In this document: piece after piece, positions 30,791 to 63,587 of the stretch
Numbering within the stretch: position 1 is the stretch's first letter
Layout of the letters: each line of letters opens with the position of its first letter
Assembly (NCBI GenBank): GCA_044892525.1
Contig: CM097888.1
Coordinates: forward strand, 71,362,001 to 71,426,000
DNA length: 64,000 nt
Reading direction: 5' to 3'
Source of the DNA: Schmidtea polychroa
Taxonomy: Eukaryota
The notes under the pieces: generated by a model
What the model saw: only the letters and a program-made list of their open reading frames with translations
Databases searched by the model: none
What the model was told of the DNA's origin: nothing
Made by a program: the position numbers and the translations under genes

Positions 30791-33605
30791 TTATGTAGTT
30801 TGATCGAATTTACCCATTTCATATTGATTTCTTCTTTTAAAAATTACATTTTGTAATTGCGAAACATCTGGACAAGCTGCACAAGCTGTCTAACAACTTT
30901 TAGTTTCTCAGAGCTTGAATTTTTCTTGGTCATTATCAATTATGACCTACATAAGACGGTAACGAATTTTCATACCTTCAAAATTATTGATTATTCAATC
31001 AAATTTGAGTAATTTCTCCTTACTTAATTTGCGCTCGTGATGCATTCCTATTGTATTTATTAATCATTTCTATATCTATATGATTATTNNNNNNNNNNNN
31101 NNNNNNNNNNNNNNNNNNNNNNNNNNNNNNNNNNNNNNNNNNNNNNNNNNNNNNNNNNNNNNNNNNNNNNNNNNNNNNNNNNNNNNNNNNNNNNNNNNNN
31201 NNNNNNNNNNNNNNNNNNNNNNNNNNNNNNNNNNNNNNNNNNNNNNNNNNNNNNNNNNNNNNNNNNNNNNNNNNNNNNNNNNNNNNNNNNNNNNNNNNNN
31301 NNNNNNNNNNNNNNNNNNNNTTATTAAATTATATATTAAAACTATATTAAAACCTTATTGCACGACACAAAATGTTAATCGAAAACTTATTTTATTCCAG
31401 GATCAAAATATAATATTCAAATTCCTCTTGTTTGAATGATATGCTAGAGATGGCTCGGCTATATCAAATACTTAAGAAACAAATCTTACTATACTCAACT
31501 ATTTCAAAAATATCAAAATAATAAAATATGTTTATAAGAACTTTTTTTCAAATTTCACCACTGATTTCTTTTCAATTGACATTGTATTTATTATAAAGCT
31601 TGACTATGAATCAGTAAATATATCGATGTCTTTTAATATAAATATGTTTAGTATAAATTTTACAGTGACCCTTCTCAAAAACAAATTAATAATCCTGCAT
31701 TGAGAATTTTTTTTGTCCTATTTTTTTTGGAATTGAAGCGACCTCATTACTAATAAATGTCTAAGGTTTAAAAAATATAGAGATGGACAAAAGTTTTAAT
31801 TAAAATGAATTATATGAAAGAATTATAGTAATTATATGCAGTTAGTTCAAACTTCAAATGGATAACATTTTCAATATTTACATTTCGTTATTTATTCATT
31901 CAATGGACTCTGGACTCTTCAAATAAACAATGGAAATGTCAAATTAAACAATCGTTACATTAAATTTGTTTTTATAAAATTTGACTGCATTTAATTAGCA
32001 TTGGCCCATGTTAAATATATCAAGGTTTTATAGCAAATTTTATAGTAAATGCTTTAACTTAACATAGCAGATTTCGCAAACTCAAATGTCCCTAATCTGT
32101 TTTGTCCCGTGACCCCTTTAAAACGAATATTAATTCTTGAAAAATCAAAATGTAAGTGGAATGATTACTATTCATGTAGATAAACTGTAGTTTTAAAATT
32201 AAAATTAATAAAACACAATGCAAATATATGTAAAATCTCAAATTTCTCAAAACATACAAACAGAGGCAATGAAAATATTTCAATAATAACCCTTTATTTT
32301 TTAATATTTTAATTTCAACAATAACTAAAACAATATATCTAAATTTAAAACCTCTCCAAAAATATGGAGATTAGTTGATCAATTCCTTGAATTTATATAC
32401 TGATGAAATGAGTGAAGCAGTTCCATTTTTTATTATAAGAGATATTTAAAGATTTGCTTTTCAATAAATTAAAAAATTTAATAAGCTCTAGCAGCCAACC
32501 TTTGCGTGTTTTGTAGTTATATGTGAAAGTGTAACTATTATAATGCTAATTAATTTTAATAATTTAATTACTAATGCAAATTTCTCAAAAGAAAATTATT
32601 TAAATATCCTCAGATGAACAGGTTTTAAATTACAGTATTTTGATTTAAAATAAATATTTAAAACTAAATTAATGTTCTTACTCAATTTAATAATATATAA
32701 TGTAAATTTATTATTCAATATTGTTTATTAAAAATGTCTGAAGAAAATAAAATTTGGCCATTCGCAAAATAAAAATCTCAAAAAACAACTTTTGTCAATC
32801 TACCACTGTACTACATTTCAGTATTTATTGTTTCAACGACTTCAAATCATCTTTTACTTCAATAATTTCAACCTTTTAGGGATAAATTATAACATTCACA
32901 TATATTAGTAAGGATGTTAAAGTGATCTCGAAGGAAAGCGATGATCGTTCAAACAGGGCCGTAACAAGGGTGGTGCGAGCGGTGCAGTCGCACAGGACGC
33001 ACATCTAAAAGGGGCGCAAAATTGGAATGCAACATTTTTTTAATGTTACCAAAAAATAACAAAATATAAATAAAAGAAATTATCAAATGGCCTGCAAAAC
33101 GACGCCTTATCTAGCCTATCTTTAACATTGCTGATTGGACCGGTCCATTAGCGTGCATTCGTAGGTGTGTATTTTGTAAAATGTTAGTCCACAAAATGGG
33201 TTCCTGTCATTTTTTCAATTAGCAACAGAATTTTAAGAGTATTACTACCTGTTGGGCTGAATCGAAGGGTAGTTGAGAAATTAGGGCAAACTTAACTAAA
33301 ATAAAATAAAAAATAAAAACAAATAAATTGACAAACAAAATAGAATAAAACATAAGAAAAACAATAATTAGAAAATAGGAATTAAAACAAAAAATATAAA
33401 GATGAGAAAAAATTAAAATAGGACAATAGAATGGCGGAAAACAACGTAAAATATAGTAAATAATAAGAAAATTAAGGAAAATAAATAAAAACATAATTTT
33501 AATAAAGAAAGTAAGAAGAAATAACTCAAAAACAAGGAAAATAAATTAAATTAATAAAATTAAGCGGTACTCAATTCTAATTGGTCCGCGCAAACAAAAA
33601 ATTAA

Positions 33606-33711
33606 TATATAAGCAGGCATTAAAAACATAACAATTACTGTTAATCAACCACCTCAATAGGTAAGCGAAATTTAAACAAAAATACTGTTAATCAACCACC
33701 TCAATAGGTAA
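33606..33711 (+). promoter_or_regulatory. Putative TATA box plus a duplicated 29-bp motif, each copy ending in a splice donor
   Basis: TATATAA at 33606-33612; TACTGTTAATCAACCACCTCAATAGGTAA at 33636-33664 and 33683-33711; AG|GTAAG at 33661 and AG|GTAAA at 33708. Confidence 0.45.
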
Positions 33712-36082
33712 ATCTATTCTACGACAGAACAGAACTCCAGCAACTAACGCACGATAACTCACGAGGACAATCCCAAGATTCAAGAGATTTTTACAGAACT
33801 AGACGATATTCGAGCATTAACTGATTCGACATAGTACCCTTTTCGACTCAGCCCATACTTGTATCAATCATTCAGTAAGGATTTTTGATTGCTTATTTTG
33901 AATTTTTAAGTAATGCGTATAGTTTAATAATATTTTTAATTTAAAAAATGGTTTTTCTTTTCGTTTGATTTTCGAATGCTTTACTTAAATTAATAATTTG
34001 CTTAATAATAAATGATTTGCTCGTTAAGAATTATTGATCTTTTATGAATTAATTTGTATGAATTATTGGAGACTATTCAATTTTGCGAGAAACGTGGCGT
34101 TGAGATACTCTATGTCATGGTGTGAGGTGCCTTCGGGAGCTCCACCGGTGGACATAGGGTATTTCAATCACGCAGCTAGATTGGGCCGAAATGTGAGGGC
34201 TTCTTCACGGGTCCAATTGCTGAAGGTGCGACTAAAAGCTATAGGTAAATGGTGGCAGAAAATTGATAGTCATGTAGTGATTGAAAACAAAGATATATAA
34301 TAAAGGAATCGGAGAGTTTGGATGTATTCGCGCAGTGATTGAGGGTGTCGCACTATCGTCTTCAAATATCGTTTTTGCTAAACCTAAAAATCTCTCTATC
34401 ATCAATGTAGGTTGTGCGTCAAAAATTGTTCAAACCTTAATGAGGCTATCTGTGACATATCTTTGATGTTCATACCTTTCACTCAGAATCTGTTCCGACC
34501 AATTTTAGCCTATGACCTTTTGAACTATTATTCCGTTCACCTAAAAGTTCTCTTAAAGACATCGTTGCAAGGAAGCTCAAAGTAGATTGCTTCAGATAAT
34601 TATTGGAATTATTCCAAATGACTGTTTACGGATAAATTGTAGAACTACGTAAAATAATTTATTATAGATAATTGTTAGAACTTCATAAAACGAGTTTGTT
34701 CCAATTAAAATTTTGAATTACATAAAATAATTTACTTCAATTAATTTTTTTTTTTGAATTATATAAAAATATTTACCTATAATCAATTATCATAATTACA
34801 CGAACTATTGGCATCAAATAATTTAAAATGAAAAATGCAACCAATTCGAACCAAGAAAATATATTTCTTCAAGTTAGCCGATAATCTTGTTAAATACAAA
34901 ATTCCAGTATTACATGAGGTTGGCAATCCAGCAGAGATAGGAAAAAATCCTCCAGCACTTAGAGAGTAGATTGATAAACTAGGCTTGAGGAATTAGAGAC
35001 GAAAAATCCACCCTTGGAGCAAGCAGTATCCAACATTTGCAATATAGATAATTTTAATTTTTCCAATAATCCGGTGAGAATTAGTAAATCATCACCATAT
35101 GCCGTAGAATTGTGAGCGAATACGCGGTGGATAAAATTCTGAGAGAATGCCATCATGCAAACATTCAACGCCTGCATTGGTAGTATAATTAAGCGGGTGA
35201 AAGCGCACCTGGCATGCGTCACCAGTTGCAGACTTACCTAATAGCCAAGTACAGTAGACAAAGTCACACACGCATCTACTCATGAAAAATTAGATCGAAC
35301 ATGCCAATTAAACTACCGACAGCTATCAGATTTCACCGCTTCGGATTAAGAGTCAATCACTGGGCTGACATTACCTTATCTACCCAGCAGGTATGATCGA
35401 CTACTAGCTCACACTGATACCGTGCTCAGTTGTTATAAAGACACTAACATTTAATGATAAACTCGATCATAATTATGAGTATTCTCTCGTTATTATCTTA
35501 GCATGAATGGCACCGAAATTATTTCAATTTTTGACATAGTTATCATTAATATTAGTATCGAATATTGTTAAATAAATATTATGTAAACCAGGTAAAACAC
35601 ATACGTGAGTAATTAAAGAAAATGAATAAACAATTAAAAATTTAAATAACCTTCCGTTTGTCCTGTAGGAACTAATCAACAGGCATTATGGACCCCTTTT
35701 CCATAGATAGTCACTCGACCCCAATATATGATACACTCAGTAAAAGCACTCGTACGGGGGGAGAAGTCGACAATTTAAATCGATTCTCGGTAAACGTGAA
35801 ATAATGACTCCAAGCGGATTAAATAAATAATCAGTTTCATCGACATAGAATTTCTCTCACAAACAGTAATCTCTTCCTTTTCCTTGTGCGAAATCTGGGT
35901 TGATTGATTTATCTTCTTATAATTAAAGCCCCGAAAGGGTACGAGAATCCATCGCGTAGTAGAACTTGTCCTGACTGGTAAACCCTTATTTTTGTCTATG
36001 ATCAGTACAGTATGAATGTAGTCAGGTGGTGACGCTCCCGCTGATTTAATTATTTTCATTTTCTTTTTCACAGTCGCTCAAA

Positions 36083-36832
36083 ATGTTGCCAAATTCCAAG
36101 CCCGTTCTTCGACCTTGTTTTTCTTGCTCCGACAAGAATTCAATTATCAAAGAGCTCCAGGCCCAAATTGGCAAGCACAAAAGAAGGATAGATGAGTTAG
36201 AGGGGACATGGTTTAGTCCCACCCAGATGAAGGAGGCTCAGAAGAAGCTGCACCGAAGCGAGCACTGTAGAGACGCGTTGATTTCCGAGAGTCGGGCGCA
36301 GAGGAGCCTGATAAAAGAGCAGTCGGAGGCGCTGCACAAATTGTACGTCCAGGCCGCAACTACAAGGAAGATCGCGAAGATCCCGATTAACGAAGCCAGT
36401 AACCTTTTCCCAGCACATCATGATATCTCTGGCGGGTCTTCTCCTCCAGTCGGAAAGTCCTGCCATGGGTGCGTAGAGACCGAGCTCTCACCTAAAGGAC
36501 CAGAAATCATCTTTACCGGAACCAGTAAAGTGCTACCTGCGATAGCATCCACCTCAGCAGCACCCTCGACCAACCAAACAGCATCGAAGCCAAAGCGTCG
36601 ACAATTATCGAGAGCAGAACGAAAGAAAAAACAGCGGGAACGCATAACCGCCAAACAGAACCAGCAATCGTCGGATCATCCAATCAAAGTCATCAACCCC
36701 CCTGCAGCAATCGATTTAGCACCAGTGATCTCAGGGCGAATCATCTCCGCCGCTGGTGTTACCTGGGAGGAAAACGCCTCTGAGTTTTTCGATTTGGAAG
36801 ATCTATTGGCAGACTCGGAGTGGGAGAAATGA
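36083..36832 (+). CDS. LTR-encoded 249-aa protein (coiled coil, basic NLS-like stretch, acidic C-terminus), 5' LTR copy
   Basis: GC-elevated ORF; acceptor TTTTCTTTTTCACAG| 9 nt before the ATG; AATAAA at 36967-36972; identical copy in the 3' LTR. Confidence 0.75.
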   Translation: MLPNSKPVLRPCFSCSDKNSIIKELQAQIGKHKRRIDELEGTWFSPTQMKEAQKKLHRSEHCRDALISESRAQRSLIKEQSEALHKLYVQAATTRKIAKIPINEASNLFPAHHDISGGSSPPVGKSCHGCVETELSPKGPEIIFTGTSKVLPAIASTSAAPSTNQTASKPKRRQLSRAERKKKQRERITAKQNQQSSDHPIKVINPPAAIDLAPVISGRIISAAGVTWEENASEFFDLEDLLADSEWEK

Positions 36833-37049
36833 GAACTTCCCCGTAAAAAGTCTTCGTTCTCTGAATTGACCTGAACATTGTCTGATAACATTTTACCTTG
36901 TCTCTTTTCCCGTTGTCGTGAACTTTATTGTATAGGTGTTAGATATATTTGTGTGATAATCTTAATAATAAACCATTTTTGTCTGCATACGTTCTTTTTG
37001 TGTTCATCTTAAGACAGTTGAGTTGAAATTGGTAAATGGTATTGAGAGT

Positions 37050-37312
37050 CATAAAATTATGAGGAGCATTAGTCAGTTGGTAAACTCAGCTAGAAATATT
37101 GCGATGGGGCGACGGAATGAGTAGACGTAAGTCCTTCTATCGGCAGTCAGGGTTGGGAAGTCGAGGCCTCAGTAAGGAGTAGTCCGAAGGAGCTGGCTCA
37201 CCTGCTTACTGGCGTCTCGCCGGCATAGCACAGTTCCAACGTGAAGCAATTCACGGGTGCTATGTTGGAGTGTAAGTTATGTACGGGTCCCGCTCGGCGA
37301 TGACCAAATAAA
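37050..37312 (+). promoter_or_regulatory. Putative genomic-RNA promoter/R region with major splice donor and poly(A) signal
   Basis: CATAAAA at 37050; Inr-like TCAGTT at 37073-37078; ATG AGT AGA C|GTAAGT (ATG 37117, donor 37127); AATAAA at 37307-37312. Confidence 0.45.
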
Positions 37313-37403
37313 TGACGGGCGAAATCGAGGTGGGCATTCATCCTCTAGACTAAAGCTGCACTAGAAAGGGGTCATCCGAGTAGTGTACCCGCAACATAAT
37401 TTT

Positions 37404-37421
37404 TGGGGGCTCAGCCGGGAT
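37404..37421 (+). promoter_or_regulatory. Primer-binding site complementary to tRNA-Pro
   Basis: TGGGGGCTCAGCCGGGAT is a 16/18 match to the classical tRNA-Pro PBS TGGGGGCTCGTCCGGGAT; it lies 7 nt after the LTR end. Confidence 0.85.
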
Positions 37422-37721
37422 TTAGAGTGAAATTTCCATTGACTAGTGTAAACTGGATAAGGATGTTATTGAGTGAATTTCTGTCGAATAGAGTGAACTC
37501 ACCGGGGATCAGTGATTTCAATGGGTTAGCGAGTGCAAATTGACTAATGCTTATCGAATCTTATTATAAATCACGAATAGAAAATAATAAAATTAAAAAT
37601 ATAAATAAAGCAAATTTAATGATAGAGAAATAAGATAAAAGTAAAATAATGATAACGAGTTAGAAAAGAGAATGTTTGACGAAACGAAGTCATATATTAC
37701 TGAAACATTTTTTTTATAGAC

Positions 37722-38207
37722 ATGACGGAATTCGTAGACCAGATACAACAACTAATCAACTTCATAAACATCGAGAATGACTCCCTTAAAACGCTGACAC
37801 AAAAAAGAGAAAGAATTAACATCATACTACTTCAAGCAATCGGGCAAACACCAGTCGTCCCCAACCACATGTTATTAGCCACAGGACTAAGTCACCCAGA
37901 TGGGAAGGTAAACCCGGAAACCGTGTATCAATGGTATCAAGAGAGATTGAACCACCCAGCATTAAATCTTGATTATCAACGTATAAAAGATCCACTAAAT
38001 ACCATATCAGATACAATCGAGCGGAAAATACAAGAAAAACTGACTCTACTACGAACTTGTCGTGCTTGTAAACTTCGTCCTATTCGCGTACTGTTTTTGC
38101 CGTGTGGACACCTCAGTCACTGCGAAGAATGTGTGAACGATTTAAAACGATGTACGATATGTAGGCATGAAATAAAAGAAACTCATATGGTTTATTATGG
38201 TGAATAA
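37722..38207 (+). CDS. 161-aa protein with a C-terminal IAP/RNF34-type C3HC4 RING, no BIR
   Basis: CRACKLRPIRVLFLPCGHLSHCEECVNDLKRCTICRHEIKETHMVYY; acceptor TTTTTTTTATAG|acATG; AATAAA overlapping the stop. Confidence 0.85.
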   Translation: MTEFVDQIQQLINFINIENDSLKTLTQKRERINIILLQAIGQTPVVPNHMLLATGLSHPDGKVNPETVYQWYQERLNHPALNLDYQRIKDPLNTISDTIERKIQEKLTLLRTCRACKLRPIRVLFLPCGHLSHCEECVNDLKRCTICRHEIKETHMVYYGE

Positions 38208-38771
38208 AACTGTTACAGCTACAATGACATCTATGAACATCAAATTGATACTGACAATTGAATGAGAATGAATGTAATTGTTGTGTGAAATTTTATTAAA
38301 GTTTTAAATTTTATTTCTATGACGAATAAATTTTTGTTGTGAACTGAGTAATTTATGGCTTTTAATTTTATTTTATAACTTTGTTTTGGAATCAAACGAA
38401 AAGAAAACCGAAATAACGTGGAATTAGTCCCAATATAGGCTGTAAGGGTACAAACCGAGCCACCTTAGGGCGGTACGTTCTATCATACGATAAAACCGAT
38501 TGGGAGGAGATAACCGATCAACCTAAGTGAGGAGCGTAGGGCGGGGTACCATCGCAAATGATGAGAAGTTTCTGCGGCATGACTGATCACCATGCCAATG
38601 TAGAAATGGATCATCGCGATCGTCGTGCGTTTTGAGCAAGGGGGGAAAGGGGACACACTCCCGAGCGGTAAAGATTAAGTCAACAAATTAAAAATAGACA
38701 GAGAAAATGGTAATCTTGAGTAAAAGAAGAAAAGAGAGGTAGAAGCATGCAGAGTAAAGAATGTTAAAGCT

Positions 38772-39170
38772 GAGCTGTTGAATAGTGCCAGCCAGTCGTA
38801 AGATCGAGTTGTTGAATAGTCCAACCGATCAGAAGGAGGAAGATTGAGCTGTTGAATAGTGCCAGCCAGTCGTAAGATCGAGTTGTTGAATAGTCCAACC
38901 GATCAGAAGGAGGAAGATTGAGCTGTTGAATAGTGCCAGCCAGTCGTAAGATCGAGTTGTTGAATAGTCCAACCGATCAGAAGGAGGAAGATTGAGCTGT
39001 TGAATAGTGCCAGCCAGTCGTAAGATCGAGTTGTCGAATAGTCCAACCGATCAGAAGGAGGAAGATTGAGCTGTTGAATAGTGCCAGCCAGTCGTAAGAT
39101 CGAGTTGTCGAATAGTCCAACCGATCAGAAGGAGGAAGATTGAGCTGTTGAATAGTGCCAGCCAGTCGTA
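38772..39170 (+). repeat. 74-bp tandem repeat, 5.4 copies, in the element's leader
   Basis: Units start at 38772, 38846, 38920, 38994, 39068 and 39142 (partial); each unit has two related GAG(C/T)TGTTGAATAGT-led halves. Confidence 0.97.
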
Positions 39171-40535
39171 AAGGCCTAGAAAAGCGAGAGATAGCAGTTA
39201 AGCTACAATGAGCTAATATCTGAATTAATAGAGAAAGGGAATATTAAAGCTAGCTAGAAACAAATTGAATGTAATTACGGAAATTTGAGTTTAGAGAGGA
39301 AATAAACGAGCTCGTAGAAAAGATAATAAGATTATAATGAAAAAGGAAAGGGAAGAAGGAAACGAATTAAAGAGATAATGGAAAATAAAGAATAGGCGAA
39401 ACGATGATAATGAGTAAAGAGGAAAGTAACCAACTAATTAAAGGGATCCCAGTGAGGTAGAGAAACTCTACGGAATATTTTTTTTGGTTAAACCGGGAAA
39501 ATGCATTTTATTGGTTCCAGAGTAGAACCGAGCGTAATAATAGTAAATATGAAAAGTAAAATAGCGACAACAGCGCAAAAGGAATAGGAAAACGAAGGGG
39601 GGTAATAAGCAGAGACCGACAACGACCTATTTTTACTATAATTGATAACGAATAGATAATTATTACGACTTGATAGATAATTGTTACTACCCCATATAGA
39701 TAATTTAAAATCGACGAAAAATTCGGGCTGATGGGAGATTATAACCCGCGGAAGTAATTGCATAAAAAATAGGGGAAGCATAAACAGAACCTAAAAGGTG
39801 TCTGTGTTCGAACGTTGTTGAAAGAATGATGAAGTCGTGTAAGCAAATGCAACACGAGATCATTTTTTCATTTTAGATATCAAACCAATCCAGTCAACCA
39901 AGACAATCCAGAACCTGCACAAAAGGAATTCGAAGAAATCGACAATCGACCAAGAATAAATTCATTCAGAACCCGCACCGAGAGACACAACAACCGGAAG
40001 ACTCCAGAACGGAAGAAGATACAGATAGCGACATCTCCAACTTCGAACGAATCATCGATATATTCAACCTCATAATATTAGCAGCCATCTGTCAAGGACT
40101 AGTGAATCTCCTCAGAATCACAGTAGCAGATTCATACAGAATATTTATCGAAGGAAACACAATCAGAACCGAACTCGTCCAATTCAATAGCCGCTAATTA
40201 CCAAGAAGCGTAAGAAAGGAATCACGGATAAACCCAATCTTAGATCTTCAAGTAAGCCAGGAGACGTATTATTTTCAGGAGACGAATTACAACAACTCAA
40301 AAGAGGACGATCTATTAAACAGCAAAGAGGAATATCACAAGGATCAAGAAGAACCAATCAAGTACCTATATTTGATCAAGAAAATCTCGGATACACCCCT
40401 AGTCGATCTCGAAGCAGAGAAAGTCTGTCCGACATCACTAATAGTTTAGCAACGTCAACCGAGGAATTATCAGCCCAAAGTTTAGTCACATCGTTAGACA
40501 ATTTAAAAGAAACAGACGAATCTAGAACACCAATC

Positions 40536-54994: not shown

Positions 54995-56383
54995 ATGGAT
55001 AAACGACAAAGAGAAGAGTTCAGAGAGATTGTCGAGCAAGTCCGAAAATCTACAACGATCAGAATACACAAACATGTTATGTGCGGAATATGTGAAAAGT
55101 TGTTAAAGGAACCTCACCAAACGCAATGTGGATGCAGAGTATGTAAAGAATGTATCAGTGAAGCAATAAAGAATAGACCACAGAGGTGCCCGGTGTGTAA
55201 AGAGACACTAATATCGAGTTTAGAAGACACTAACGAGGATAAAGCCGCAGTGAAAGACATGTTAAACACCAACCTGGGATGCAAAAATGCCCCATGCGAA
55301 TGGAAAGGAGTAATATGGAAGGTAGTACAACATATGGGAGAATGTATGTACAGAATTGGCCAGTGTGAAAGGTGCCATAAAACCATTCGAGCAAGCGAAG
55401 AAAAAGAGCATCAAAGGCAGTGTGAGGAGAGATTAGAAAGATGTGAACACTGTGGAGAAATAGATACGTGGAAAAATCTCACCCTCAAACATCACAATGT
55501 CCAAGAGGAGAGAGTATGTGCAGAGTTCAGTGGGGAATGCCCAAACGGATGTAACCAAGGGGAAATAATGAAGGTGGCACAGCATCTAAGGGAATGTGAA
55601 AAGAAAAGAATGACATGCGTACTAGGCAAATGGGGTTGTCAGAAACTACTACACCGAGGGGAGTTACCACATCATTTAGTAGAAAATGCTTCAACCCACG
55701 CAGAAATGTGGTCGACTGCGTTACAAGAAAGCGAGGAGAAAGTAAAACAAATGGAGATAGAGATAGCATCGTTGAAAGTATTAGTCAAAGAACTACTAGA
55801 AGAAAGGGAAGCGTTCGAAGAAGCCCGAGCAAACATAAAGATGCAAATAAACCGAATAGAAATCAGTAATAATCAGGCCAAGGAGCTACATCAGAAAATA
55901 CGGGAAATAAATCTAAATGAGATAACCCCAACAGCACCCTACATATGGAAGATTACGGGAGTAAAGGAAAGAATACGAAAAGCAAAAACCGGAGAAGAGA
56001 CAAGAATAACAAGTCCTGCATTCCATTCTTGGAAAAATGGGTACAAAATGAAAATGAAGATATATCCCAACGGGGACGGAACCGGATTAGACACACACTT
56101 TTCGATTTTCTTTCTGTTATGTAAAGGAGAATACGACGAAATAATAGAGTGGCCGTTCCAGGCGAAAATCGATATTGCACTAATGAATGACCGAAACATC
56201 CACGAACAAAGCTTCAAGACAACTGGAAACCAAATGTGTTACCAGAGACCTACGGAAGAAGAAGGATCAGCAACAGGAGCACCTACGTTCATCCTACAAC
56301 AAAAAGTAGAAGATATGGCAAGAAAGGGCACGGTGTATATCAAGATGACCGTAAGGAAAGAGGAGAAGGGCAGAACGGAGTAA
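54995..56383 (+). CDS. Intronless full-length TRAF-family protein (RING, TRAF zinc fingers, coiled coil, MATH domain), 462 aa
   Basis: CGIC..LLKEP.QT.CGCRVC..C..CPVC; GC.W.G....H...C; YIWKI...SPAF..GYKM..KIYPNGDG.G..TH.S.FF.L.KGEYD..I.WPF. Confidence 0.93.
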   Translation: MDKRQREEFREIVEQVRKSTTIRIHKHVMCGICEKLLKEPHQTQCGCRVCKECISEAIKNRPQRCPVCKETLISSLEDTNEDKAAVKDMLNTNLGCKNAPCEWKGVIWKVVQHMGECMYRIGQCERCHKTIRASEEKEHQRQCEERLERCEHCGEIDTWKNLTLKHHNVQEERVCAEFSGECPNGCNQGEIMKVAQHLRECEKKRMTCVLGKWGCQKLLHRGELPHHLVENASTHAEMWSTALQESEEKVKQMEIEIASLKVLVKELLEEREAFEEARANIKMQINRIEISNNQAKELHQKIREINLNEITPTAPYIWKITGVKERIRKAKTGEETRITSPAFHSWKNGYKMKMKIYPNGDGTGLDTHFSIFFLLCKGEYDEIIEWPFQAKIDIALMNDRNIHEQSFKTTGNQMCYQRPTEEEGSATGAPTFILQQKVEDMARKGTVYIKMTVRKEEKGRTE

Positions 56384-56577
56384 ACGATCGAATAATGTTG
56401 TATATAATAATCTGTATATATCGGTGTATATAACCAATAAAATATTATATAATAATAGTATGAAAAACCCTAAATACGTAAACCCAAAAATGATGCGAAA
56501 ATTTCCAAAGAAACAGCAAATAATGAATAAATTCCTTTTTCATAATAAAAAGCTTAATCGATGTCTATGATTTAGAG

Positions 56578-57633
56578 ATGACACAAGAGAAACTAACCGA
56601 AACTGCGATAGTCCCAACCAATGTCAACAAGACACAAATTCCCCGAGAACATAACAAAAAATGGAACAAAGTAATGTTCCAACTAACTAATCTCACCCGA
56701 AATCACATCGAAGAAGCTAGAGAGGATGAGAATAGTCAATACCAATGGTTAATACACAACTTAAGAGCGGAAGCAGAAGCATGCAAAAGAGCATCAAAAT
56801 GGGCGTCACTAGAAAATACCCGCCAAGAAGCGCACAGCCACTACTTAAAGCAGCTAGTGCAGGAAGCGAGAAAGAGACTTACCGATGAGAACACCAAGCG
56901 CGAAGCGGAAAAGCAAATAGAAGGAAGGAAAATGATGCACTTAGTGGCAGAAGCGAGAAAATGGAAAAGACAAAGCAATGAAATGAAAAAAGAGATGAAA
57001 GAATTGCCCATGAGACTCGGATATGAGAGCGAACAGGGTAAATGGGAGGAAAATTTAATAATAAAGGAAGAACTGAAACGGTTGAAAAAGGTCGCCGCCC
57101 GAAGCCAAACATGGCAGATGAAGGCTATGGAGTTTGAACGACATTTGGCAATAAAATGCGACATAAGAGAGCACGAGAATGCCGCAATGGAAGAGATGAT
57201 AACCCAGCAAGCAGGACGGGTTGTGGAATTAGTAAATCAGGTCGAAGAGATGAAAAGAGACCTTAATGGATTACAAGGATCGTTAGAACAAAGAAACATG
57301 GTCCTGGCGGGAAAAAACAGAAAATTAGAAAACGAGAGGAAAATGTATACCGAAAATATCAAAAACTTGGAAATAGAAATTGAAAAATGGAAGGGCGACG
57401 AGAAAATCAAGGCCTTAGATAGACAAGTAGAGGCGAAAGACGAAGAGACAAGGTATCTCACTTATCTGCTCGACGAAGAGCTGAATATCACTCGAGCTCT
57501 AAGAGACGAAGTTAATGAATTGAGAGCTCAAATCCCCCAATATTACCTACCCTATGACCCTATTGCGATACAGTTGCATCCAGCGGTCGATAGTGATGAA
57601 GGTTATGTGGGACAGGAGGAAACCTTCGTATAA
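56578..57633 (+). CDS. 351-aa coiled-coil accessory protein ending in ETFV
   Basis: Long heptad-rich ORF with the element's codon style; TAG 2 nt before the ATG; AATAAA 6 nt after the stop. Confidence 0.75.
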   Translation: MTQEKLTETAIVPTNVNKTQIPREHNKKWNKVMFQLTNLTRNHIEEAREDENSQYQWLIHNLRAEAEACKRASKWASLENTRQEAHSHYLKQLVQEARKRLTDENTKREAEKQIEGRKMMHLVAEARKWKRQSNEMKKEMKELPMRLGYESEQGKWEENLIIKEELKRLKKVAARSQTWQMKAMEFERHLAIKCDIREHENAAMEEMITQQAGRVVELVNQVEEMKRDLNGLQGSLEQRNMVLAGKNRKLENERKMYTENIKNLEIEIEKWKGDEKIKALDRQVEAKDEETRYLTYLLDEELNITRALRDEVNELRAQIPQYYLPYDPIAIQLHPAVDSDEGYVGQEETFV

Positions 57634-57800
57634 GGGTGAATAAAAGGATAAAAACAAAAATCGGGACGTATATCCCAAACAAAAAAATTAAAGTATTGTA
57701 AAAGTATTCAAGGGACTGTAACCCGAACTATTAAAATTTTATATAAATGCATAAGTATAAGTCGCACTATAGCGCACCATTAACTGTACATATTACAGAT

Positions 57801-58508
57801 ATGAAAATCGAGGAAATAATAGAAATTACGAGCGACGTGGAAGAGGGAGAGATTGAGGCAGAAACAACAGAAACACAAACGTTAAAGGCCAAGTTACGGG
57901 AAGAGAGGGACGAAAACGAGAGACTAATAAACAAATATATAGAAGACCGAAAAATGATTAAAATACTAAAGAAGGAGTGCGAAGCGTTAGGAGAAATAAA
58001 GAGAGAAGCTGAAGAGAAGAATGAATGGTTGCAAGAACAACGAACACGAGGAAGAAACTGGGAAAAGATTGCAGAGGAACTATGGCAAGAGAGGGCAAGC
58101 TTCAAGGCAGAAGAAGTAATCCAAGATTATTGGAAAACAGAGGCGAAAGAACACCAAATAACTATAAATAAATTAAATCGACAATTGGAGGAAAAACAAC
58201 GAGAAAGTGAGGAAATGAAGAAATGGATTCGCAAGTACCAAGAGATCGAGAGAAAACAACAACAACAACAACAACGAAACCTTTCGCAGGAAAACGAACA
58301 AGATTTCCTACAAATCGAACTAAAAAGGAATCTCGACAAGAAACGGGAAGAAATTAAGAGACTGAAAAAGGAGATAAGGCACATGAAAAGGGAGGCCCGT
58401 GAAAAGAACAGACAGTTGGAAATGCTGCCCGAGTTAAGACACAGAGTCATTAAAGCGGAATCCACCCTGATGAGAATCGCCGAAAATAACCCAAACCAGA
58501 ATCATTAA
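57801..58508 (+). CDS. ~235-aa coiled-coil accessory protein (253 aa from the upstream ATG at 57747)
   Basis: TTAAC..TATTACAG|atATG at 57801; E/K/R/Q-rich helix; AATAAA at 58535. Confidence 0.72.
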   Translation: MKIEEIIEITSDVEEGEIEAETTETQTLKAKLREERDENERLINKYIEDRKMIKILKKECEALGEIKREAEEKNEWLQEQRTRGRNWEKIAEELWQERASFKAEEVIQDYWKTEAKEHQITINKLNRQLEEKQRESEEMKKWIRKYQEIERKQQQQQQRNLSQENEQDFLQIELKRNLDKKREEIKRLKKEIRHMKREAREKNRQLEMLPELRHRVIKAESTLMRIAENNPNQNH

Positions 58509-58549: not shown

Positions 58550-59209
58550 ATGTATAATAGTATCATGCGAGGCGAGATGATGATAACAATGACGGTATTG
58601 ATGATTCTGACGGAGAACAAACAAGTAAACGCCCAACCGAAAATCGTGCGAGATTACCGAAATCAAAATCAAGAACCTAAACGAGAATCCGGCCAATGCA
58701 CATACCCTATGACAGTAAAAATCCATATCATCCAAACCCTTCAATCAACCCGTTCACACATCAACAACATCCAAACAATGTGTAAAAAGAATCCCATTTG
58801 TAAAATGATAAACAAACAAATCCTCGAACAAATCCAACAATTCGACCAGCTAGAACAACAAATGCAACAAGAGAATTTTGAAAATCTTGTAGAAAAGCCA
58901 AAAACACCTCCCGAAATCAATGACACCCATTATCTCATATATGTGGTGATCGCAGAAACCCTCCTCCTATGTCTACCAATACTCATGAAGATTTACGAAG
59001 TTAGAAATAAATGTAGAACCCCGACAGCAATAAGAGTAACCTCGAACAGAAATCCTCAAGAAGTGCCACTGACAAATCTTAACCCAACCCCATTCCGACC
59101 TCGAATCCCGAGTAACCAACCAATCCAGCCGAATTCTTACAGTCAGACCTATCTCAACATCAATACCCAAACCAACCAACAACCGCCGGCAGAAGCATCA
59201 AATGGTTAA
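58550..59209 (+). CDS. 219-aa type-I membrane protein (signal peptide, helical ectodomain, TM, P/Q/N-rich tail)
   Basis: MMITMTVLMILTENKQVNAQ; three ectodomain Cys; TM YLIYVVIAETLLLCLPILM; tail contains YLNI. Confidence 0.72.
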   Translation: MYNSIMRGEMMITMTVLMILTENKQVNAQPKIVRDYRNQNQEPKRESGQCTYPMTVKIHIIQTLQSTRSHINNIQTMCKKNPICKMINKQILEQIQQFDQLEQQMQQENFENLVEKPKTPPEINDTHYLIYVVIAETLLLCLPILMKIYEVRNKCRTPTAIRVTSNRNPQEVPLTNLNPTPFRPRIPSNQPIQPNSYSQTYLNINTQTNQQPPAEASNG

Positions 59210-59441: not shown

Positions 59442-62400
59442 TGTTGGGCTGAATCGAAGGGTAGTTGAGAAATTAGGGCAAACTTAACTAAAATAAAATA
59501 AAAAATAAAAACAAATAAATTGACAAACAAAATAGAATAAAACATAAGAAAAACAATAATTAGAAAATAGGAATTAAAACAAAAAATATAAAGATGAGAA
59601 AAAATTAAAATAGGACAATAGAATGGCGGAAAACAACGTAAAATATAGTAAATAATAAGAAAATTAAGGAAAATAAATAAAAACATAATTTTAATAAAGA
59701 AAGTAAGAAGAAATAACTCAAAAACAAGGAAAATAAATTAAATTAATAAAATTAAGCGGTACTCAATTCTAATTGGTCCGCGCAAACAAAAAATTAATAT
59801 ATAAGCAGGCATTAAAAACATAACAATTACTGTTAATCAACCACCTCAATAGGTAAGCGAAATTTAAACAAAAATACTGTTAATCAACCACCTCAATAGG
59901 TAAATCTATTCTACGACAGAACAGAACTCCAGCAACTAACGCACGATAACTCACGAGGACAATCCCAAGATTCAAGAGATTTTTACAGAACTAGACGATA
60001 TTCGAGCATTAACTGATTCGACATAGTACCCTTTTCGACTCAGCCCATACTTGTATCAATCATTCAGTAAGGATTTTTGATTGCTTATTTTGAATTTTTA
60101 AGTAATGCGTATAGTTTAATAATATTTTTAATTTAAAAAATGGTTTTTCTTTTCGTTTGATTTTCGAATGCTTTACTTAAATTAATAATTTGCTTAATAA
60201 TAAATGATTTGCTCGTTAAGAATTATTGATCTTTTATGAATTAATTTGTATGAATTATTGGAGACTATTCAATTTTGCGAGAAACGTGGCGTTGAGATAC
60301 TCTATGTCATGGTGTGAGGTGCCTTCGGGAGCTCCACCGGTGGACATAGGGTATTTCAATCACGCAGCTAGATTGGGCCGAAATGTGAGGGCTTCTTCAC
60401 GGGTCCAATTGCTGAAGGTGCGACTAAAAGCTATAGGTAAATGGTGGCAGAAAATTGATAGTCATGTAGTGATTGAAAACAAAGATATATAATAAAGGAA
60501 TCGGAGAGTTTGGATGTATTCGCGCAGTGATTGAGGGTGTCGCACTATCGTCTTCAAATATCGTTTTTGCTAAACCTAAAAATCTCTCTATCATCAATGT
60601 AGGTTGTGCGTCAAAAATTGTTCAAACCTTAATGAGGCTATCTGTGACATATCTTTGATGTTCATACCTTTCACTCAGAATCTGTTCCGACCAATTTTAG
60701 CCTATGACCTTTTGAACTATTATTCCGTTCACCTAAAAGTTCTCTTAAAGACATCGTTGCAAGGAAGCTCAAAGTAGATTGCTTCAGATAATTATTGGAA
60801 TTATTCCAAATGACTGTTTACGGATAAATTGTAGAACTACGTAAAATAATTTATTATAGATAATTGTTAGAACTTCATAAAACGAGTTTGTTCCAATTAA
60901 AATTTTGAATTACATAAAATAATTTACTTCAATTAATTTTTTTTTTGAATTATATAAAAATATTTACCTATAATCAATTATCATAATTACACGAACTATT
61001 GGCATCAAATAATTTAAAATGAAAAATGCAACCAATTCGAACCAAGAAAATATATTTCTTCAAGTTAGCCGATAATCTTGTTAAATACAAAATTCCAGTA
61101 TTACATGAGGTTGGCAATCCAGCAGAGATAGGAAAAAATCCTCCAGCACTTAGAGAGTAGATTGATAAACTAGGCTTGAGGAATTAGAGACGAAAAATCC
61201 ACCCTTGGAGCAAGCAGTATCCAACATTTGCAATATAGATAATTTTAATTTTTCCAATAATCCGGTGAGAATTAGTAAATCATCACCATATGCCGTAGAA
61301 TTGTGAGCGAATACGCGGTGGATAAAATTCTGAGAGAATGCCATCATGCAAACATTCAACGCCTGCATTGGTAGTATAATTAAGCGGGTGAAAGCGCACC
61401 TGGCATGCGTCACCAGTTGCAGACTTACCTAATAGCCAAGTACAGTAGACAAAGTCACACACGCATCTACTCATGAAAAATTAGATCGAACATGCCAATT
61501 AAACTACCGACAGCTATCAGATTTCACCGCTTCGGATTAAGAGTCAATCACTGGGCTGACATTACCTTATCTACCCAGCAGGTATGATCGACTACTAGCT
61601 CACACTGATACCGTGCTCAGTTGTTATAAAGACACTAACATTTAATGATAAACTCGATCATAATTATGAGTATTCTCTCGTTATTATCTTAGCATGAATG
61701 GCACCGAAATTATTTCAATTTTTGACATAGTTATCATTAATATTAGTATCGAATATTGTTAAATAAATATTATGTAAACCAGGTAAAACACATACGTGAG
61801 TAATTAAAGAAAATGAATAAACAATTAAAAATTTAAATAACCTTCCGTTTGTCCTGTAGGAACTAATCAACAGGCATTATGGACCCCTTTTCCATAGATA
61901 GTCACTCGACCCCAATATATGATACACTCAGTAAAAGCACTCGTACGGGGGGAGAAGTCGACAATTTAAATCGATTCTCGGTAAACGTGAAATAATGACT
62001 CCAAGCGGATTAAATAAATAATCAGTTTCATCGACATAGAATTTCTCTCACAAACAGTAATCTCTTCCTTTTCCTTGTGCGAAATCTGGGTTGATTGATT
62101 TATCTTCTTATAATTAAAGCCCCGAAAGGGTACGAGAATCCATCGCGTAGTAGAACTTGTCCTGACTGGTAAACCCTTATTTTTGTCTATGATCAGTACA
62201 GTATGAATGTAGTCAGGTGGTGACGCTCCCGCTGATTTAATTATTTTCATTTTCTTTTTCACAGTCGCTCAAAATGTTGCCAAATTCCAAGCCCGTTCTT
62301 CGACCTTGTTTTTCTTGCTCCGACAAGAATTCAATTATCAAAGAGCTCCAGGCCCAAATTGGCAAGCACAAAAGAAGGATAGATGAGTTAGAGGGGACAT

Positions 62401-63587
62401 GGTTTAGTCCCACCCAGATGAAGGAGGCTCAGAAGAAGCTGCACCGAAGCGAGCACTGTAGAGACGCGTTGATTTCCGAGAGTCGGGCGCAGAGGAGCCT
62501 GATAAAAGAGCAGTCGGAGGCGCTGCACAAATTGTACGTCCAGGCCGCAACTACAAGGAAGATCGCGAAGATCCCGATTAACGAAGCCAGTAACCTTTTC
62601 CCAGCACATCATGATATCTCTGGCGGGTCTTCTCCTCCAGTCGGAAAGTCCTGCCATGGGTGCGTAGAGACCGAGCTCTCACCTAAAGGACCAGAAATCA
62701 TCTTTACCGGAACCAGTAAAGTGCTACCTGCGATAGCATCCACCTCAGCAGCACCCTCGACCAACCAAACAGCATCGAAGCCAAAGCGTCGACAATTATC
62801 GAGAGCAGAACGAAAGAAAAAACAGCGGGAACGCATAACCGCCAAACAGAACCAGCAATCGTCGGATCATCCAATCAAAGTCATCAACCCCCCTGCAGCA
62901 ATCGATTTAGCACCAGTGATCTCAGGGCGAATCATCTCCGCCGCTGGTGTTACCTGGGAGGAAAACGCCTCTGAGTTTTTCGATTTGGAAGATCTATTGG
63001 CAGACTCGGAGTGGGAGAAATGAGAACTTCCCCGTAAAAAGTCTTCGTTCTCTGAATTGACCTGAACATTGTCTGATAACATTTTACCTTGTCTCTTTTC
63101 CCGTTGTCGTGAACTTTATTGTATAGGTGTTAGATATATTTGTGTGATAATCTTAATAATAAACCATTTTTGTCTGCATACGTTCTTTTTGTGTTCATCT
63201 TAAGACAGTTGAGTTGAAATTGGTAAATGGTATTGAGAGTCATAAAATTATGAGGAGCATTAGTCAGTTGGTAAACTCAGCTAGAAATATTGCGATGGGG
63301 CGACGGAATGAGTAGACGTAAGTCCTTCTATCGGCAGTCAGGGTTGGGAAGTCGAGGCCTCAGTAAGGAGTAGTCCGAAGGAGCTGGCTCACCTGCTTAC
63401 TGGCGTCTCGCCGGCATAGCACAGTTCCAACGTGAAGCAATTCACGGGTGCTATGTTGGAGTGTAAGTTATGTACGGGTCCCGCTCGGCGATGACCAAAT
63501 AAATGACGGGCGAAATCGAGGTGGGCATTCATCCTCTAGACTAAAGCTGCACTAGAAAGGGGTCATCCGAGTAGTGTACCCGCAACA
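59442..63587 (+). repeat. 3' LTR (4146 bp)
   Basis: Same sequence as the 5' LTR; the only difference noticed is T11 versus T10 near 34745/60937. Confidence 0.97.
62274..63023 (+). CDS. LTR-encoded 249-aa protein, 3' LTR copy
   Basis: Translation identical to 36083-36832. Confidence 0.75.
   Translation: MLPNSKPVLRPCFSCSDKNSIIKELQAQIGKHKRRIDELEGTWFSPTQMKEAQKKLHRSEHCRDALISESRAQRSLIKEQSEALHKLYVQAATTRKIAKIPINEASNLFPAHHDISGGSSPPVGKSCHGCVETELSPKGPEIIFTGTSKVLPAIASTSAAPSTNQTASKPKRRQLSRAERKKKQRERITAKQNQQSSDHPIKVINPPAAIDLAPVISGRIISAAGVTWEENASEFFDLEDLLADSEWEK

What the first reader, a model, noticed from the sequence alone, without database searches (positions are those of the whole stretch)
33250..63587. 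30.3-kb Gypsy element built like an enveloped virus with a host-manipulation gene set
Seen: one bounded insertion (TSD, paired LTRs, PBS) with an unbroken 4617-aa polyprotein and seven other ORFs. Known: ordinary Ty3/Gypsy elements are far smaller; the giants are plant Ogre and planarian Burro elements. Inference: envelope plus Bcl-2-like, IAP-type RING, TRAF, ankyrin and ubiquitin-like modules is a gene complement typical of poxviruses or herpesviruses rather than retrotransposons. This could be an infectious invertebrate retrovirus-like lineage that rewires death and innate-immune signalling.
Basis: partly seen in the sequence, partly recalled or inferred. Interest (0 to 1): 0.96.

Follow-up and report, generated by a model that had tools for sequence, protein, structure and literature searches.

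The report
Intact Burro-type giant enveloped retroelement
This is a complete, very recently inserted 30-kb Gypsy-type retrovirus-like element that carries a viral envelope gene and several host-like cell-death and ubiquitin-signalling genes, but this kind of element (planarian "Burro") and this reading of it are already in the literature.

Summary
It is a 30,338-bp LTR element (33250-63587) with two 4.15-kb LTRs that have no mismatches and one 1-bp indel. It has TG..CA ends, a 4-bp TSD (TACC), a tRNA-type PBS and an unbroken 4617-aa polyprotein. Seven further ORFs of at least 150 aa lie on the same strand.

The polyprotein reads gag, three CCHC knuckles, an orphan stretch, env, PR, RT, RNase H, IN and two ankyrin modules. 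Pol is Ty3/Gypsy: the best solved structure is Ty3 Gag-Pol at E=1e-120.

Env is a class III fusogen. Pfam Monjiviricetes_fusion scores 1e-69, and fold matches go to chuvirus glycoproteins and herpesvirus gB.

The TRAF-like ORF, the IAP-type RING ORF and the ankyrin repeats are solid. The ubiquitin-like module is weak but supported through a relative. The Bcl-2-like module rests on one sub-threshold Pfam match.

Novelty fails. Jurka 2007 (GYPSM1), Grohme 2018 (Burro-1 to -4) and Arkhipova & Yushenova 2019 already describe this architecture in planarians. They also put forward the provirus and host-tinkering idea. An eLife 2026 paper describes GAG-ENV-POL gypsy elements with gB-type env in flatworms.

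I could not test DNA identity to a named Burro family or identify the host.

The parts
33246..33249 (.). target-site duplication, 5' copy (TACC)
33250..37396 (+). 5' LTR, 4147 bp, TG...CA
   Evidence: no mismatch and one 1-bp indel against the 3' LTR
36083..36832 (+). 249-aa ORF inside the 5' LTR (coiled-coil plus a basic stretch; no family match)
37404..37421 (+). primer-binding site, 18 nt complementary to a tRNA 3' end with CCA
   Evidence: read from the sequence
37722..38207 (+). 161-aa accessory ORF with a C-terminal IAP-type RING (E3 ligase type); no BIR domain
   Evidence: Pfam zf-C3HC4_3 E=8e-12; PDB best cIAP2/cIAP1/XIAP RING
38697..39245 (.). 74-bp tandem repeat array in the long untranslated leader
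40536..54389 (+). unbroken 4617-aa polyprotein (gag, orphan stretch, env, pol, ankyrin modules, C-terminal membrane module)
40689..41441 (+). Gag core (Retrotrans_gag, aa 52-145) and three CCHC zinc knuckles (aa 252-302)
43980..44219 (+). ubiquitin-like module (aa about 1149-1228), weak
   Evidence: Pfam ubiquitin E=0.006; aligns to the ubiquitin-like stretch of P0031
44988..45200 (+). possible Bcl-2-like helical module (aa 1485-1555), sub-threshold
   Evidence: Pfam PF00452 E=0.071; no other support
45330..47255 (+). env: internal signal-like stretch (aa 1599-1616), Cys-rich ectodomain, TM anchor (aa 2178-2196), tail; class III fusion glycoprotein
   Evidence: Pfam PF24664 E=1e-69; AF2 model pLDDT 66.7; Foldseek gB E about 1e-10 and chuvirus glycoproteins E=1.6e-31; 14 invariant Cys
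47724..47999 (+). aspartic protease (DTGA)
   Evidence: Pfam RVP E=2e-8
48663..49139 (+). reverse transcriptase (YIDD)
   Evidence: Pfam RVT_1 E=1e-35; PDB Ty3
49326..49715 (+). RNase H
   Evidence: Pfam RT_RNaseH E=7e-39
50037..50555 (+). integrase (H2C2 zinc domain plus catalytic core)
   Evidence: Pfam Integrase_H2C2 E=4e-20, rve E=2e-12
51375..52988 (+). two paralogous ankyrin-repeat modules (aa 3614-3810 and 3954-4151)
   Evidence: the two modules align at E=1.6e-12
53376..54248 (+). C-terminal membrane-protein-like module: signal-like stretch, about 245 aa with Cys, TM anchor; orphan
   Evidence: hydropathy, sequence, no family match
54995..56383 (+). 462-aa TRAF-like accessory ORF: RING, TRAF zinc fingers, coiled coil, MATH/TRAF-C
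   Evidence: Pfam TRAF-mep_MATH E=3e-25; PDB TRAF1/2/3 and TRAF6
56578..57633 (+). 351-aa coiled-coil-type accessory ORF, orphan
57747..58508 (+). 253-aa coiled-coil-type accessory ORF, orphan
58550..59209 (+). 219-aa accessory ORF with a signal-like N-terminus and one TM segment (small membrane protein), orphan
59442..63587 (+). 3' LTR, 4146 bp, with its own copy of the 249-aa ORF (62274-63023)
63588..63591 (.). target-site duplication, 3' copy (TACC)

Best explanation
This is one full-length, structurally intact and very young copy of a Burro-type giant Ty3/Gypsy (Metaviridae-like) envelope-bearing LTR retroelement. It sits in AT-rich (about 25% GC) host DNA of the kind seen in dugesiid planarians.

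Shown here:
- LTR, PBS and TSD anatomy.
- A single 4617-aa reading frame ordered gag, three CCHC knuckles, orphan region, env, PR, RT, RNase H, IN, two ankyrin modules.
- A class III (gB / rhabdovirus-G / chuvirus-G type) fusion glycoprotein lies in frame between gag and pol. It has its own signal-like stretch and a TM anchor.
- Separate accessory genes encode an IAP-type RING protein and a complete TRAF-like protein.

Inferred mechanism:
- The 5' LTR drives a genomic RNA whose translation gives the polyprotein.
- The internal signal-like stretch puts the env ectodomain into the ER lumen and the TM anchor returns the chain to the cytosol. This is the topology used by flavivirus and alphavirus polyproteins. 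The element's protease and host signal peptidase then release the parts.
- The same topology applies to the C-terminal membrane module.
- Accessory ORFs are probably read from spliced or spliced-leader trans-spliced subgenomic RNAs, because several start just after a T-rich tract plus AG.
- Env would let particles pass from expressing somatic cells into heritable (stem or germ) cells, as Drosophila gypsy does.
- The RING, TRAF-like, ankyrin, ubiquitin-like and possible Bcl-2-like modules would bias ubiquitin, TNF-receptor/TRAF and apoptosis signalling so that producer cells survive.
For: Anatomy.

Ty3/Gypsy pol: the Pfam set, the best PDB hit Ty3 Gag-Pol at E=1.3e-120 against retroviral RTs at about 1e-33, and the best database relatives, which are Gypsy-type polyproteins.

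Env: PF24664 E=1e-69. A model built from 14 sequences reached pLDDT 66.7. It matches herpesvirus gB (E=2e-10, prob 1.0) and chuvirus-type glycoproteins (E=1.6e-31). Across 14 relatives there are 14 invariant cysteines, and all 14 keep the signal-like and TM stretches.

Gag-env-pol in one ORF is shared by 13 metagenome relatives, at 41-46% identity in pol and 32-39% in env.

Accessory genes.

Burro match, feature by feature against PMC6431247 section 7: size over 30 kb, giant ORF1, three CCHC knuckles as reported for S. mediterranea, env in frame between gag and pol, TRAF/MATH, RING, ubiquitin-like, BCL2-like, ankyrin, tandem repeats and accessory ORFs.

Expression and PIWI control of BURRO1 in planarian somatic tissue are reported in PMC8532177.

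Acceptor-like contexts in front of the ORFs.
Against: - No Burro or GYPSM1 sequence, and no planarian genome, was within reach of the tools. Family identity therefore rests on architecture and the literature, not on an alignment.
- This copy differs from published Burro1. ORF1 is 4617 aa, not 4873 aa. TRAF/MATH is a separate downstream ORF rather than part of ORF1.
- No BIR and no dUTPase-like match was found.
- The Bcl-2-like call is sub-threshold.
- No purine-rich tract lies directly upstream of the 3' LTR.
- Nothing here shows RNA, protein, particles or any effect on the host. The whole functional half of the statement is inference.
Confidence: 0.82

Rival explanations
1. A Burro-like but undescribed family or host: a distinct lineage of giant gag-env-pol Gypsy elements, from another flatworm or another invertebrate, that assembled a similar cargo independently.
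For: No close protein exists in 5.8 billion clusters. The best pol identity is 46%, from anonymous metagenome contigs. The TRAF ORF has a single 37% hit. The stretch aa 1100-1620 has no homolog among 1.84 billion representatives. The gene layout differs from Burro1 and from the D. tigrina element as described. Relative P0031 also carries ubiquitin-like and ankyrin modules, but its ankyrin repeats sit between env and PR, which shows the cargo is shuffled within the lineage.
Against: Planarian genomes appear to be absent from the protein collections searched, so the lack of close hits is expected. Three CCHC knuckles, AT-rich flanks, tandem repeats and the whole module list match S. mediterranea Burro as published. 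Burro-2, -3 and -4 are reported to differ in layout.
Confidence: 0.13
2. The element is real, but the host-like modules are passenger captures with no role in host manipulation. They would be carried along in a young copy that has not yet had time to decay.
For: The LTRs differ by a single 1-bp indel, so intact ORFs in this one copy say nothing about selection. Most of the cargo is orphan sequence. The cargo differs between relatives.
Against: TRAF/MATH, RING, ankyrin and ubiquitin-like modules recur in several Burro families and in two planarian genera according to PMC6431247. A ubiquitin-like module and ankyrin repeats recur in relative P0031 at about 45% pol identity. The TRAF ORF keeps the complete four-part TRAF architecture. 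Such retention is hard to explain without selection.
Confidence: 0.25
3. An assembly chimera or nested composite: an ordinary Gypsy element joined to an endogenous chuvirus-like glycoprotein gene and host gene fragments.
For: The size is unusual. Three N runs lie elsewhere in the window.
Against: No N lies inside the element. One uninterrupted 4617-aa frame runs through gag, env and pol. The same gag-env-pol single-ORF layout occurs in 13 independent contigs. The near-identical LTRs are flanked by a matching 4-bp TSD. Sense-strand A-richness is uniform across the whole internal region.
Confidence: 0.03

Closest known systems
[quoted passage not shown] 2018; reviewed in PMC6431247)
   Same: Giant Gypsy-type element over 30 kb. 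Multi-thousand-aa ORF1 starting with gag and three CCHC knuckles. Env in frame between gag and pol with mononegavirus-type glycoprotein hits. PR-RT-RH-IN. Ankyrin, RING, MATH/TRAF, ubiquitin-like and BCL2-like motifs. Tandem repeats. Accessory ORFs. AT-rich host.
   Different: ORF1 is 4617 aa, against 4873 aa in Burro1. TRAF/MATH is a separate downstream gene, not part of ORF1. No BIR or dUTPase-like match was found here. Nucleotide identity could not be measured.
Burro-like element of Dugesia (Girardia) tigrina (PMC6431247)
   Same: The same giant architecture, with TRAF/MATH encoded by an accessory ORF rather than inside ORF1.
   Different: There the accessory ORF is upstream, ORF1 is 5140 aa with two CCHC knuckles, and a midasin-like stretch is present. 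Here TRAF is downstream, there are three knuckles, and no midasin match was seen.
GAG-ENV-POL Ty3/gypsy 'errantivirus-like' elements with HSV/gB-type env in Platyhelminthes, Nematoda and Bryozoa (PMC13524379, eLife 2026)
   Same: Gag-env-pol order, a class III (gB-type) fusogen and a conserved cysteine framework.
   Different: As far as I read the paper, it does not describe giant size or a signalling-gene cargo. In the present lineage gag, env and pol are fused in one frame.
Mosquito BEL/Pao elements that captured a chuvirus glycoprotein (PMC7642597)
   Same: An LTR retroelement carrying a Jingchuvirales-type glycoprotein as env.
   Different: A different retroelement superfamily (BEL/Pao), normal size, no signalling cargo.
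Drosophila gypsy and other insect errantiviruses
   Same: Ty3/Gypsy pol with an env that allows soma-to-germline transfer.
   Different: The insect env is class I (baculovirus F type), sits downstream of pol and is read from a spliced mRNA. The elements are 7-8 kb with no accessory genes.
Complex retroviruses and fish foamy-like ERVs with accessory ORFs; large DNA viruses with vIAP, vBcl-2 and ankyrin genes
   Same: Accessory genes aimed at cell death and ubiquitin or NF-kB type signalling (working analogy only).
   Different: No shared ancestry of the replication core. Here pol is Ty3/Gypsy and the function of the accessory genes is untested.

Membership tests
Ty3/Gypsy (Metaviridae) LTR retroelement | Paired LTRs with TG...CA ends, a short TSD and a tRNA-type PBS | tested here: met
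Ty3/Gypsy (Metaviridae) LTR retroelement | pol order PR-RT-RNase H-IN | tested here: met
   Pfam coordinates 2397 / 2710 / 2931 / 3168
Ty3/Gypsy (Metaviridae) LTR retroelement | RT/IN closer to Ty3/Gypsy than to Retroviridae, Caulimoviridae or BEL/Copia | tested here: met
   PDB: Ty3 Gag-Pol E=1.3e-120, caulimovirus 1.5e-61, retroviral RTs about 1e-33. No phylogenetic tree was built.
Ty3/Gypsy (Metaviridae) LTR retroelement | Polypurine tract next to the 3' LTR | tested here: inconclusive
   No clear purine run in the 40 nt upstream of 59442
Burro giant retroelements of dugesiid planarians | Total length over 30 kb with an internal region above 20 kb | tested here: met
   30,338 bp in total, 22,045 bp internal
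Burro giant retroelements of dugesiid planarians | Giant ORF1 starting with gag plus CCHC knuckles (three in S. mediterranea) | tested here: met
   4617 aa; knuckles at aa 252-302; criterion from PMC6431247
Burro giant retroelements of dugesiid planarians | env in frame between gag and pol, related to mononegavirus-type fusion glycoproteins | tested here: met
Burro giant retroelements of dugesiid planarians | Cargo of MATH/TRAF, RING, ankyrin, ubiquitin-like, BCL2-like, BIR and dUTPase-like motifs | tested here: inconclusive
   TRAF, RING and ankyrin are met. Ubiquitin-like is weak. BCL2-like is sub-threshold. BIR and dUTPase-like were not found.
Burro giant retroelements of dugesiid planarians | Nucleotide or protein identity to the GYPSM1 / Burro-1 to -4 consensus | not testable with these tools
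   No Repbase or PlanMine sequence is available. Grohme 2018 is not held. No close protein exists in the collections.
Burro giant retroelements of dugesiid planarians | Host is a dugesiid planarian | not testable with these tools
   The flanks are 22-30% GC, which fits the over-70% A/T content reported for S. mediterranea. No marker gene identified the host.
Envelope-carrying GAG-ENV-POL gypsy elements with gB-type env (PMC13524379) | Class III fusogen fold | tested here: met
   Foldseek: gB E=2e-10, chuvirus G E=1.6e-31. TM-scores are low (0.2-0.4) because the model's domain packing is uncertain.
Envelope-carrying GAG-ENV-POL gypsy elements with gB-type env (PMC13524379) | Gene order gag-env-pol and a conserved cysteine framework | tested here: met
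Retroviridae (true retrovirus) | Retroviral-type pol and a class I TM/SU env downstream of pol | tested here: not met
   pol is closest to Ty3. env is class III and lies upstream of pol.
Bcl-2 family (for the module at aa 1485-1555) | A significant match to the Bcl-2 family profile or fold | tested here: inconclusive
   PF00452 scores 14.1 bits against a cut-off of 31.4, E=0.071. No PDB hit. The model was unusable.

The most novel reading that the evidence does not exclude
This copy may belong to a Burro family or sub-lineage whose layout has not been described. It would have TRAF as a free-standing downstream gene, a second membrane-protein module at the end of the polyprotein, a small membrane protein, two coiled-coil proteins and a protein-coding ORF inside each 4-kb LTR. 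It would also be a currently active member, because it is intact and its LTRs differ by only one 1-bp indel. The gag-env-pol fusion with an internal signal sequence would then be a conserved expression strategy of a wider aquatic-invertebrate lineage, seen in all 13 metagenome relatives.
Probability: 0.2. Interest if true: 0.5.

Novelty: already known. Interest (0 to 1): 0.3.

Why it matters
Burro-type elements are the largest known LTR retroelements. They are the clearest case of a Gypsy element that combines a captured RNA-virus fusogen with host-like death and ubiquitin-signalling genes. An intact, near-zero-age copy is a good reference for descriptive work on how such a polyprotein is laid out. 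It also bears on how retroelements reach heritable cells in animals that propagate through somatic stem cells. As a discovery it adds little, because both the architecture and the hypothesis have been published since 2007-2019. What this analysis adds:
- The env is class III, not F-type.
- The internal signal and TM topology is conserved in all 14 proteins compared.
- The Bcl-2-like call is weak in this copy.
- There are orphan membrane modules and an LTR-borne ORF.

Tried and rejected
**Finding the host or other copies**
- Exact-protein look-ups of the TRAF, RING and 219-aa ORFs found nothing on record.
- A homolog search with the TRAF ORF gave one 37% hit.
- A search with the stand-alone env gave none.
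- A metagenome scan with RT-IN gave three distant loci at 41-45% identity. A viral-contig scan gave none.
- One of those loci (L004) comes from a contig labelled human-skin metagenome. It is a Gypsy-type pol that I do not take for human sequence, and I did not use it further.
- Rfam and tRNA scans of the window were empty.
- Grohme 2018 is not held. No supplements with Burro probe sequences are held.

**Testing the Bcl-2-like and ubiquitin-like modules**
- A full HMMER scan of 1.84 billion representatives with aa 1100-1620 gave no hits.
- The single-sequence AlphaFold model had pLDDT 41, so I did not run a fold search on it.
- PDB sequence searches were empty.

**Other checks that came back empty or negative**
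- aa 300-1000 has no Pfam or PDB match.
- No paralogy between accessory ORFs and no fragment of the element in the flanks.
- A furin-like site in the env loop occurs only in this copy, not in the 13 relatives, so I did not use it.
- Chimeric assembly was rejected (see rival explanations).

**Consensus line**
The alignment tool printed a consensus line by itself.


Full report

Yes.
- Direct repeats of 4147 and 4146 bp lie at 33250-37396 and 59442-63587. They differ by no mismatch and one 1-bp indel.
- They begin with TG and end with CA. TACC lies immediately before the first and immediately after the second, which is a 4-bp target-site duplication.
- Seven nucleotides after the 5' LTR, at 37404-37421, there are 18 nt that read as the complement of a tRNA 3' end including CCA.
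- The three N runs of the window lie outside the element.
- The element is 30,338 bp long with 22,045 bp between the LTRs.
- On the + strand there is one 4617-aa ORF without a stop (40536-54389). There are seven more ORFs of at least 150 aa: 249 aa in each LTR, then 161, 462, 351, 253 and 219 aa.
- The longest stop-free run on the opposite strand of the internal region is 156 codons, against 4732 on the + strand. ORFs cover 83% of the internal region.
- GC rises from about 25% in the flanks to about 39% inside. The sense strand is strongly A-rich throughout, as expected for one transcription unit.

**2. What is in it?**

Pfam on the polyprotein and direct reading give this order:

| Residues (aa) | Content |
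|---|---|
| 52-145 | Gag core |
| 252-302 | Three CCHC knuckles |
| about 320-1100 | Acidic/basic stretch with no match anywhere |
| about 1149-1228 | Ubiquitin-like stretch |
| 1485-1555 | Helical stretch with a sub-threshold Bcl-2 match |
| 1599-2240 | env |
| 2397-2488 | Protease (DTGA) |
| 2710-2868 | RT (YIDD) |
| 2931-3060 | RNase H |
| 3168-3340 | Integrase |
| 3614-3810 and 3954-4151 | Two paralogous ankyrin modules (E=1.6e-12 between them) |
| 4281-4571 | Signal-like stretch, about 245 residues with cysteines, and a TM anchor: a second membrane-protein-like module, orphan |

Upstream of gag lie a 161-aa ORF and a 74-bp tandem array. The C-terminal RING of that ORF matches cIAP1, cIAP2 and XIAP RINGs best (E=1.6e-11). 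No BIR was found.

Downstream of the polyprotein:
- A 462-aa ORF has the complete TRAF layout. The RING and TRAF fingers match TRAF6 at E=1.8e-14. The coiled coil and MATH/TRAF-C match TRAF1/2/3 at about 1e-27.
- Two coiled-coil-type ORFs follow.
- A 219-aa ORF has a signal-like start and one TM segment.

**3. Pol and env**

The pol region matches the solved Ty3 Gag-Pol at E=1.3e-120. A caulimovirus polyprotein scores 1.5e-61, and retroviral and foamy RTs score about 1e-33. This places the element in Ty3/Gypsy, not Retroviridae.

Env matches Pfam Monjiviricetes_fusion over nearly the whole profile (E=1e-69 to 2e-71). I aligned it with the env parts of 13 relatives. Fourteen cysteines are invariant.

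I then modelled it. Mean pLDDT was 66.7, and the beta-rich core reached 75-93.
- Foldseek against the PDB returns only herpesvirus gB at the top (E=2e-10, probability 1.0).
- Against predicted viral structures the best matches are glycoproteins of chuviruses and chu-, qin- and xinmo-like viruses (E=1.6e-31 to 1.4e-23). Rhabdo-like viruses and gB follow.
- TM-scores are low (0.2-0.4) because the relative placement of domains in the model is uncertain, so the fold-class call rests on E-values plus the Pfam match.

The env is therefore a class III fusogen of the Jingchuvirales/Mononegavirales type. I did not see the gypsy/baculovirus F-type (class I) likeness that PMC6431247 also mentions.

**4. 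Relatives**

In 5.8 billion protein clusters, the closest pol relatives by identity (41-46%) are 13 long proteins from ENA, JGI and NCBI metagenome contigs. They carry gag, PF24664 env, PR, RT, RNase H and IN in one reading frame. All 14 proteins, counting this one, keep a hydrophobic signal-like stretch at the start of env and a TM anchor at its end.

One relative, P0031, also has a ubiquitin-like domain in front of env (Pfam E=4e-5). Our stretch aligns to it at E=7e-4. P0031 also has ankyrin repeats, but they lie between env and PR. The conserved core is thus gag-env-pol in one frame, and the cargo is variable.

One relative's contig shows LTR-like repeats about 16 kb apart. No near-identical protein or contig was found anywhere. 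I read this as planarian genomes being absent from these collections.

**5. How it most likely works**

Shown: the parts listed above. The rest of this section is inferred.

The topology of the polyprotein is self-consistent. Gag and the orphan/ubiquitin-like/helical region would be cytosolic. The internal signal-like stretch would take the env ectodomain into the ER lumen. The anchor at aa 2178-2196 would return the chain to the cytosol for PR, RT, IN and the ankyrin modules. The second signal-like and TM pair near the C-terminus would repeat the trick. This is the strategy of flavivirus and alphavirus structural polyproteins, and its conservation in all 14 proteins argues that it is used.

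Several accessory ORFs (RING, TRAF, the 351-aa ORF and the LTR ORF) begin a few nucleotides after a T-rich tract plus AG. That suggests spliced subgenomic RNAs or, in a flatworm, spliced-leader trans-spliced RNAs. This is untested.

An env would allow transfer from expressing somatic cells into heritable cells. BURRO1 RNA is reported in differentiated intestinal cells and is held down by the PIWI protein SMEDWI-2 (PMC8532177).

A RING E3 of IAP type, a TRAF-like adaptor/E3, ankyrin modules, a ubiquitin-like domain and perhaps a Bcl-2-like domain point to interference with ubiquitin-dependent TNF-receptor/TRAF and apoptosis signalling. That is analogy with large DNA viruses, not evidence.

**6. 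Comparison with what is known**

Arkhipova & Yushenova 2019 (PMC6431247 section 7) summarise Jurka 2007 (GYPSM1) and Grohme et al. 2018 (Burro-1 to -4).
- These are giant Gypsy-like elements over 30 kb, present in thousands of copies in Schmidtea mediterranea.
- ORF1 is 4873 aa and carries gag plus three CCHC knuckles, MATH_TRAF_C, Ubi2/SUMO-like, BCL2-like, env in frame between gag and PR (with hits to arthropod and fish mononegavirus fusion glycoproteins), dUTPase-like, RT, RH, IN and ankyrin.
- They also have BIR/RING motifs, tandem repeats and accessory ORFs.
- In the D. tigrina relative, TRAF/MATH is a separate accessory ORF.
- The authors already state that Burro-like elements may be integrated proviruses and 'tinkerers' with apoptosis and ubiquitination.

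The eLife 2026 survey (PMC13524379) describes GAG-ENV-POL Ty3/gypsy elements with HSV/gB-type env in Platyhelminthes, Nematoda and Bryozoa. Capture of a chuvirus glycoprotein by mosquito BEL/Pao elements is also published (PMC7642597).

The present copy fits Burro feature by feature, including the three knuckles reported for S. mediterranea and AT-rich flanks (one search gives over 70% A/T for that genome). The differences from Burro1 are:
- A shorter ORF1.
- TRAF as a free downstream gene.
- No BIR or dUTPase-like match.

These are of the kind already reported between Burro families and species.

**7. Limits**

I could not align the element to any Burro consensus or name the host. Membership in a named family is therefore inferred, at about 0.8. 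The Bcl-2-like module in this copy rests on one Pfam match at E=0.071. A 1.84-billion-protein scan, PDB searches and a single-sequence model added nothing.

Unexplained items:
- The 249-aa ORF carried inside each LTR.
- The orphan aa 320-1100 stretch.
- The C-terminal membrane module.
- The lack of an obvious polypurine tract.

**8. Rules and slips**
The element has no broken gene to describe.
- Locus L004 carries a human-skin-metagenome label. It is a Gypsy-type pol that I do not take for human, and I did not use it.

**9. Verdict**

The kind is already known. The element is biologically remarkable, but as a finding it is a rediscovery. Interest is 0.3.

Noticed in passing
window 36083-36832 and 62274-63023: Each 4.15-kb LTR carries an intact 249-aa ORF (coiled-coil plus a basic stretch, no family match). 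It is preceded by a pyrimidine tract plus AG. An LTR-borne coding ORF is unusual for Gypsy elements.
   Followed up: partly
window 53376-54248 (polyprotein aa 4281-4571) and 58550-59209: Besides env there are two more membrane-protein-like units. One is a signal-like stretch, Cys-bearing domain and TM anchor at the very end of the polyprotein. The other is a 219-aa ORF with a signal-like start and one TM segment. Neither has a detectable homolog.
   Followed up: partly
window 37700-37721, 54975-54994, 56560-56577, 36060-36082: Several accessory ORFs start a few nucleotides after a T-rich tract followed by AG. This hints at spliced or trans-spliced subgenomic mRNAs.
   Followed up: no
window 14605-15669 (+): A host gene lies in the flank. 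A 192-aa ORF has a bZIP basic region and leucine zipper (Pfam bZIP_1 E=7.5e-5). A Ser/Asn/Gln-rich 153-aa ORF just upstream is probably an exon of the same gene. Local GC rises to 37%.
   Followed up: partly
window 22846-23364 and 24178-24588 (-): Two ORFs (172 and 136 aa) next to masked N runs read like remnants of another mobile element. They had no Pfam match.
   Followed up: partly
L002 (ENA ERZ25039515 contig_27322) and L003: Metagenome relatives with the same gag-env-pol single ORF. L002 has LTR-like repeats about 16 kb apart, a 499-aa downstream ORF and a neighbouring DNA_pol_B_2 gene (Polinton/Maverick-like). L003 is flanked by bacterial-type ABC/MacB genes, so the host may have horizontally acquired genes or the contig may be chimeric.
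   Followed up: partly
P0031 (L001 281-12454): This relative carries ankyrin repeats between env and PR and a ubiquitin-like domain before env. The same kinds of cargo sit at different positions in the polyprotein across the lineage.
   Followed up: partly
window 46119-46130 (polyprotein aa 1862-1865): A furin-type basic motif lies in a low-confidence loop of the env model. It is absent from the 13 relatives at that loop.
   Followed up: yes
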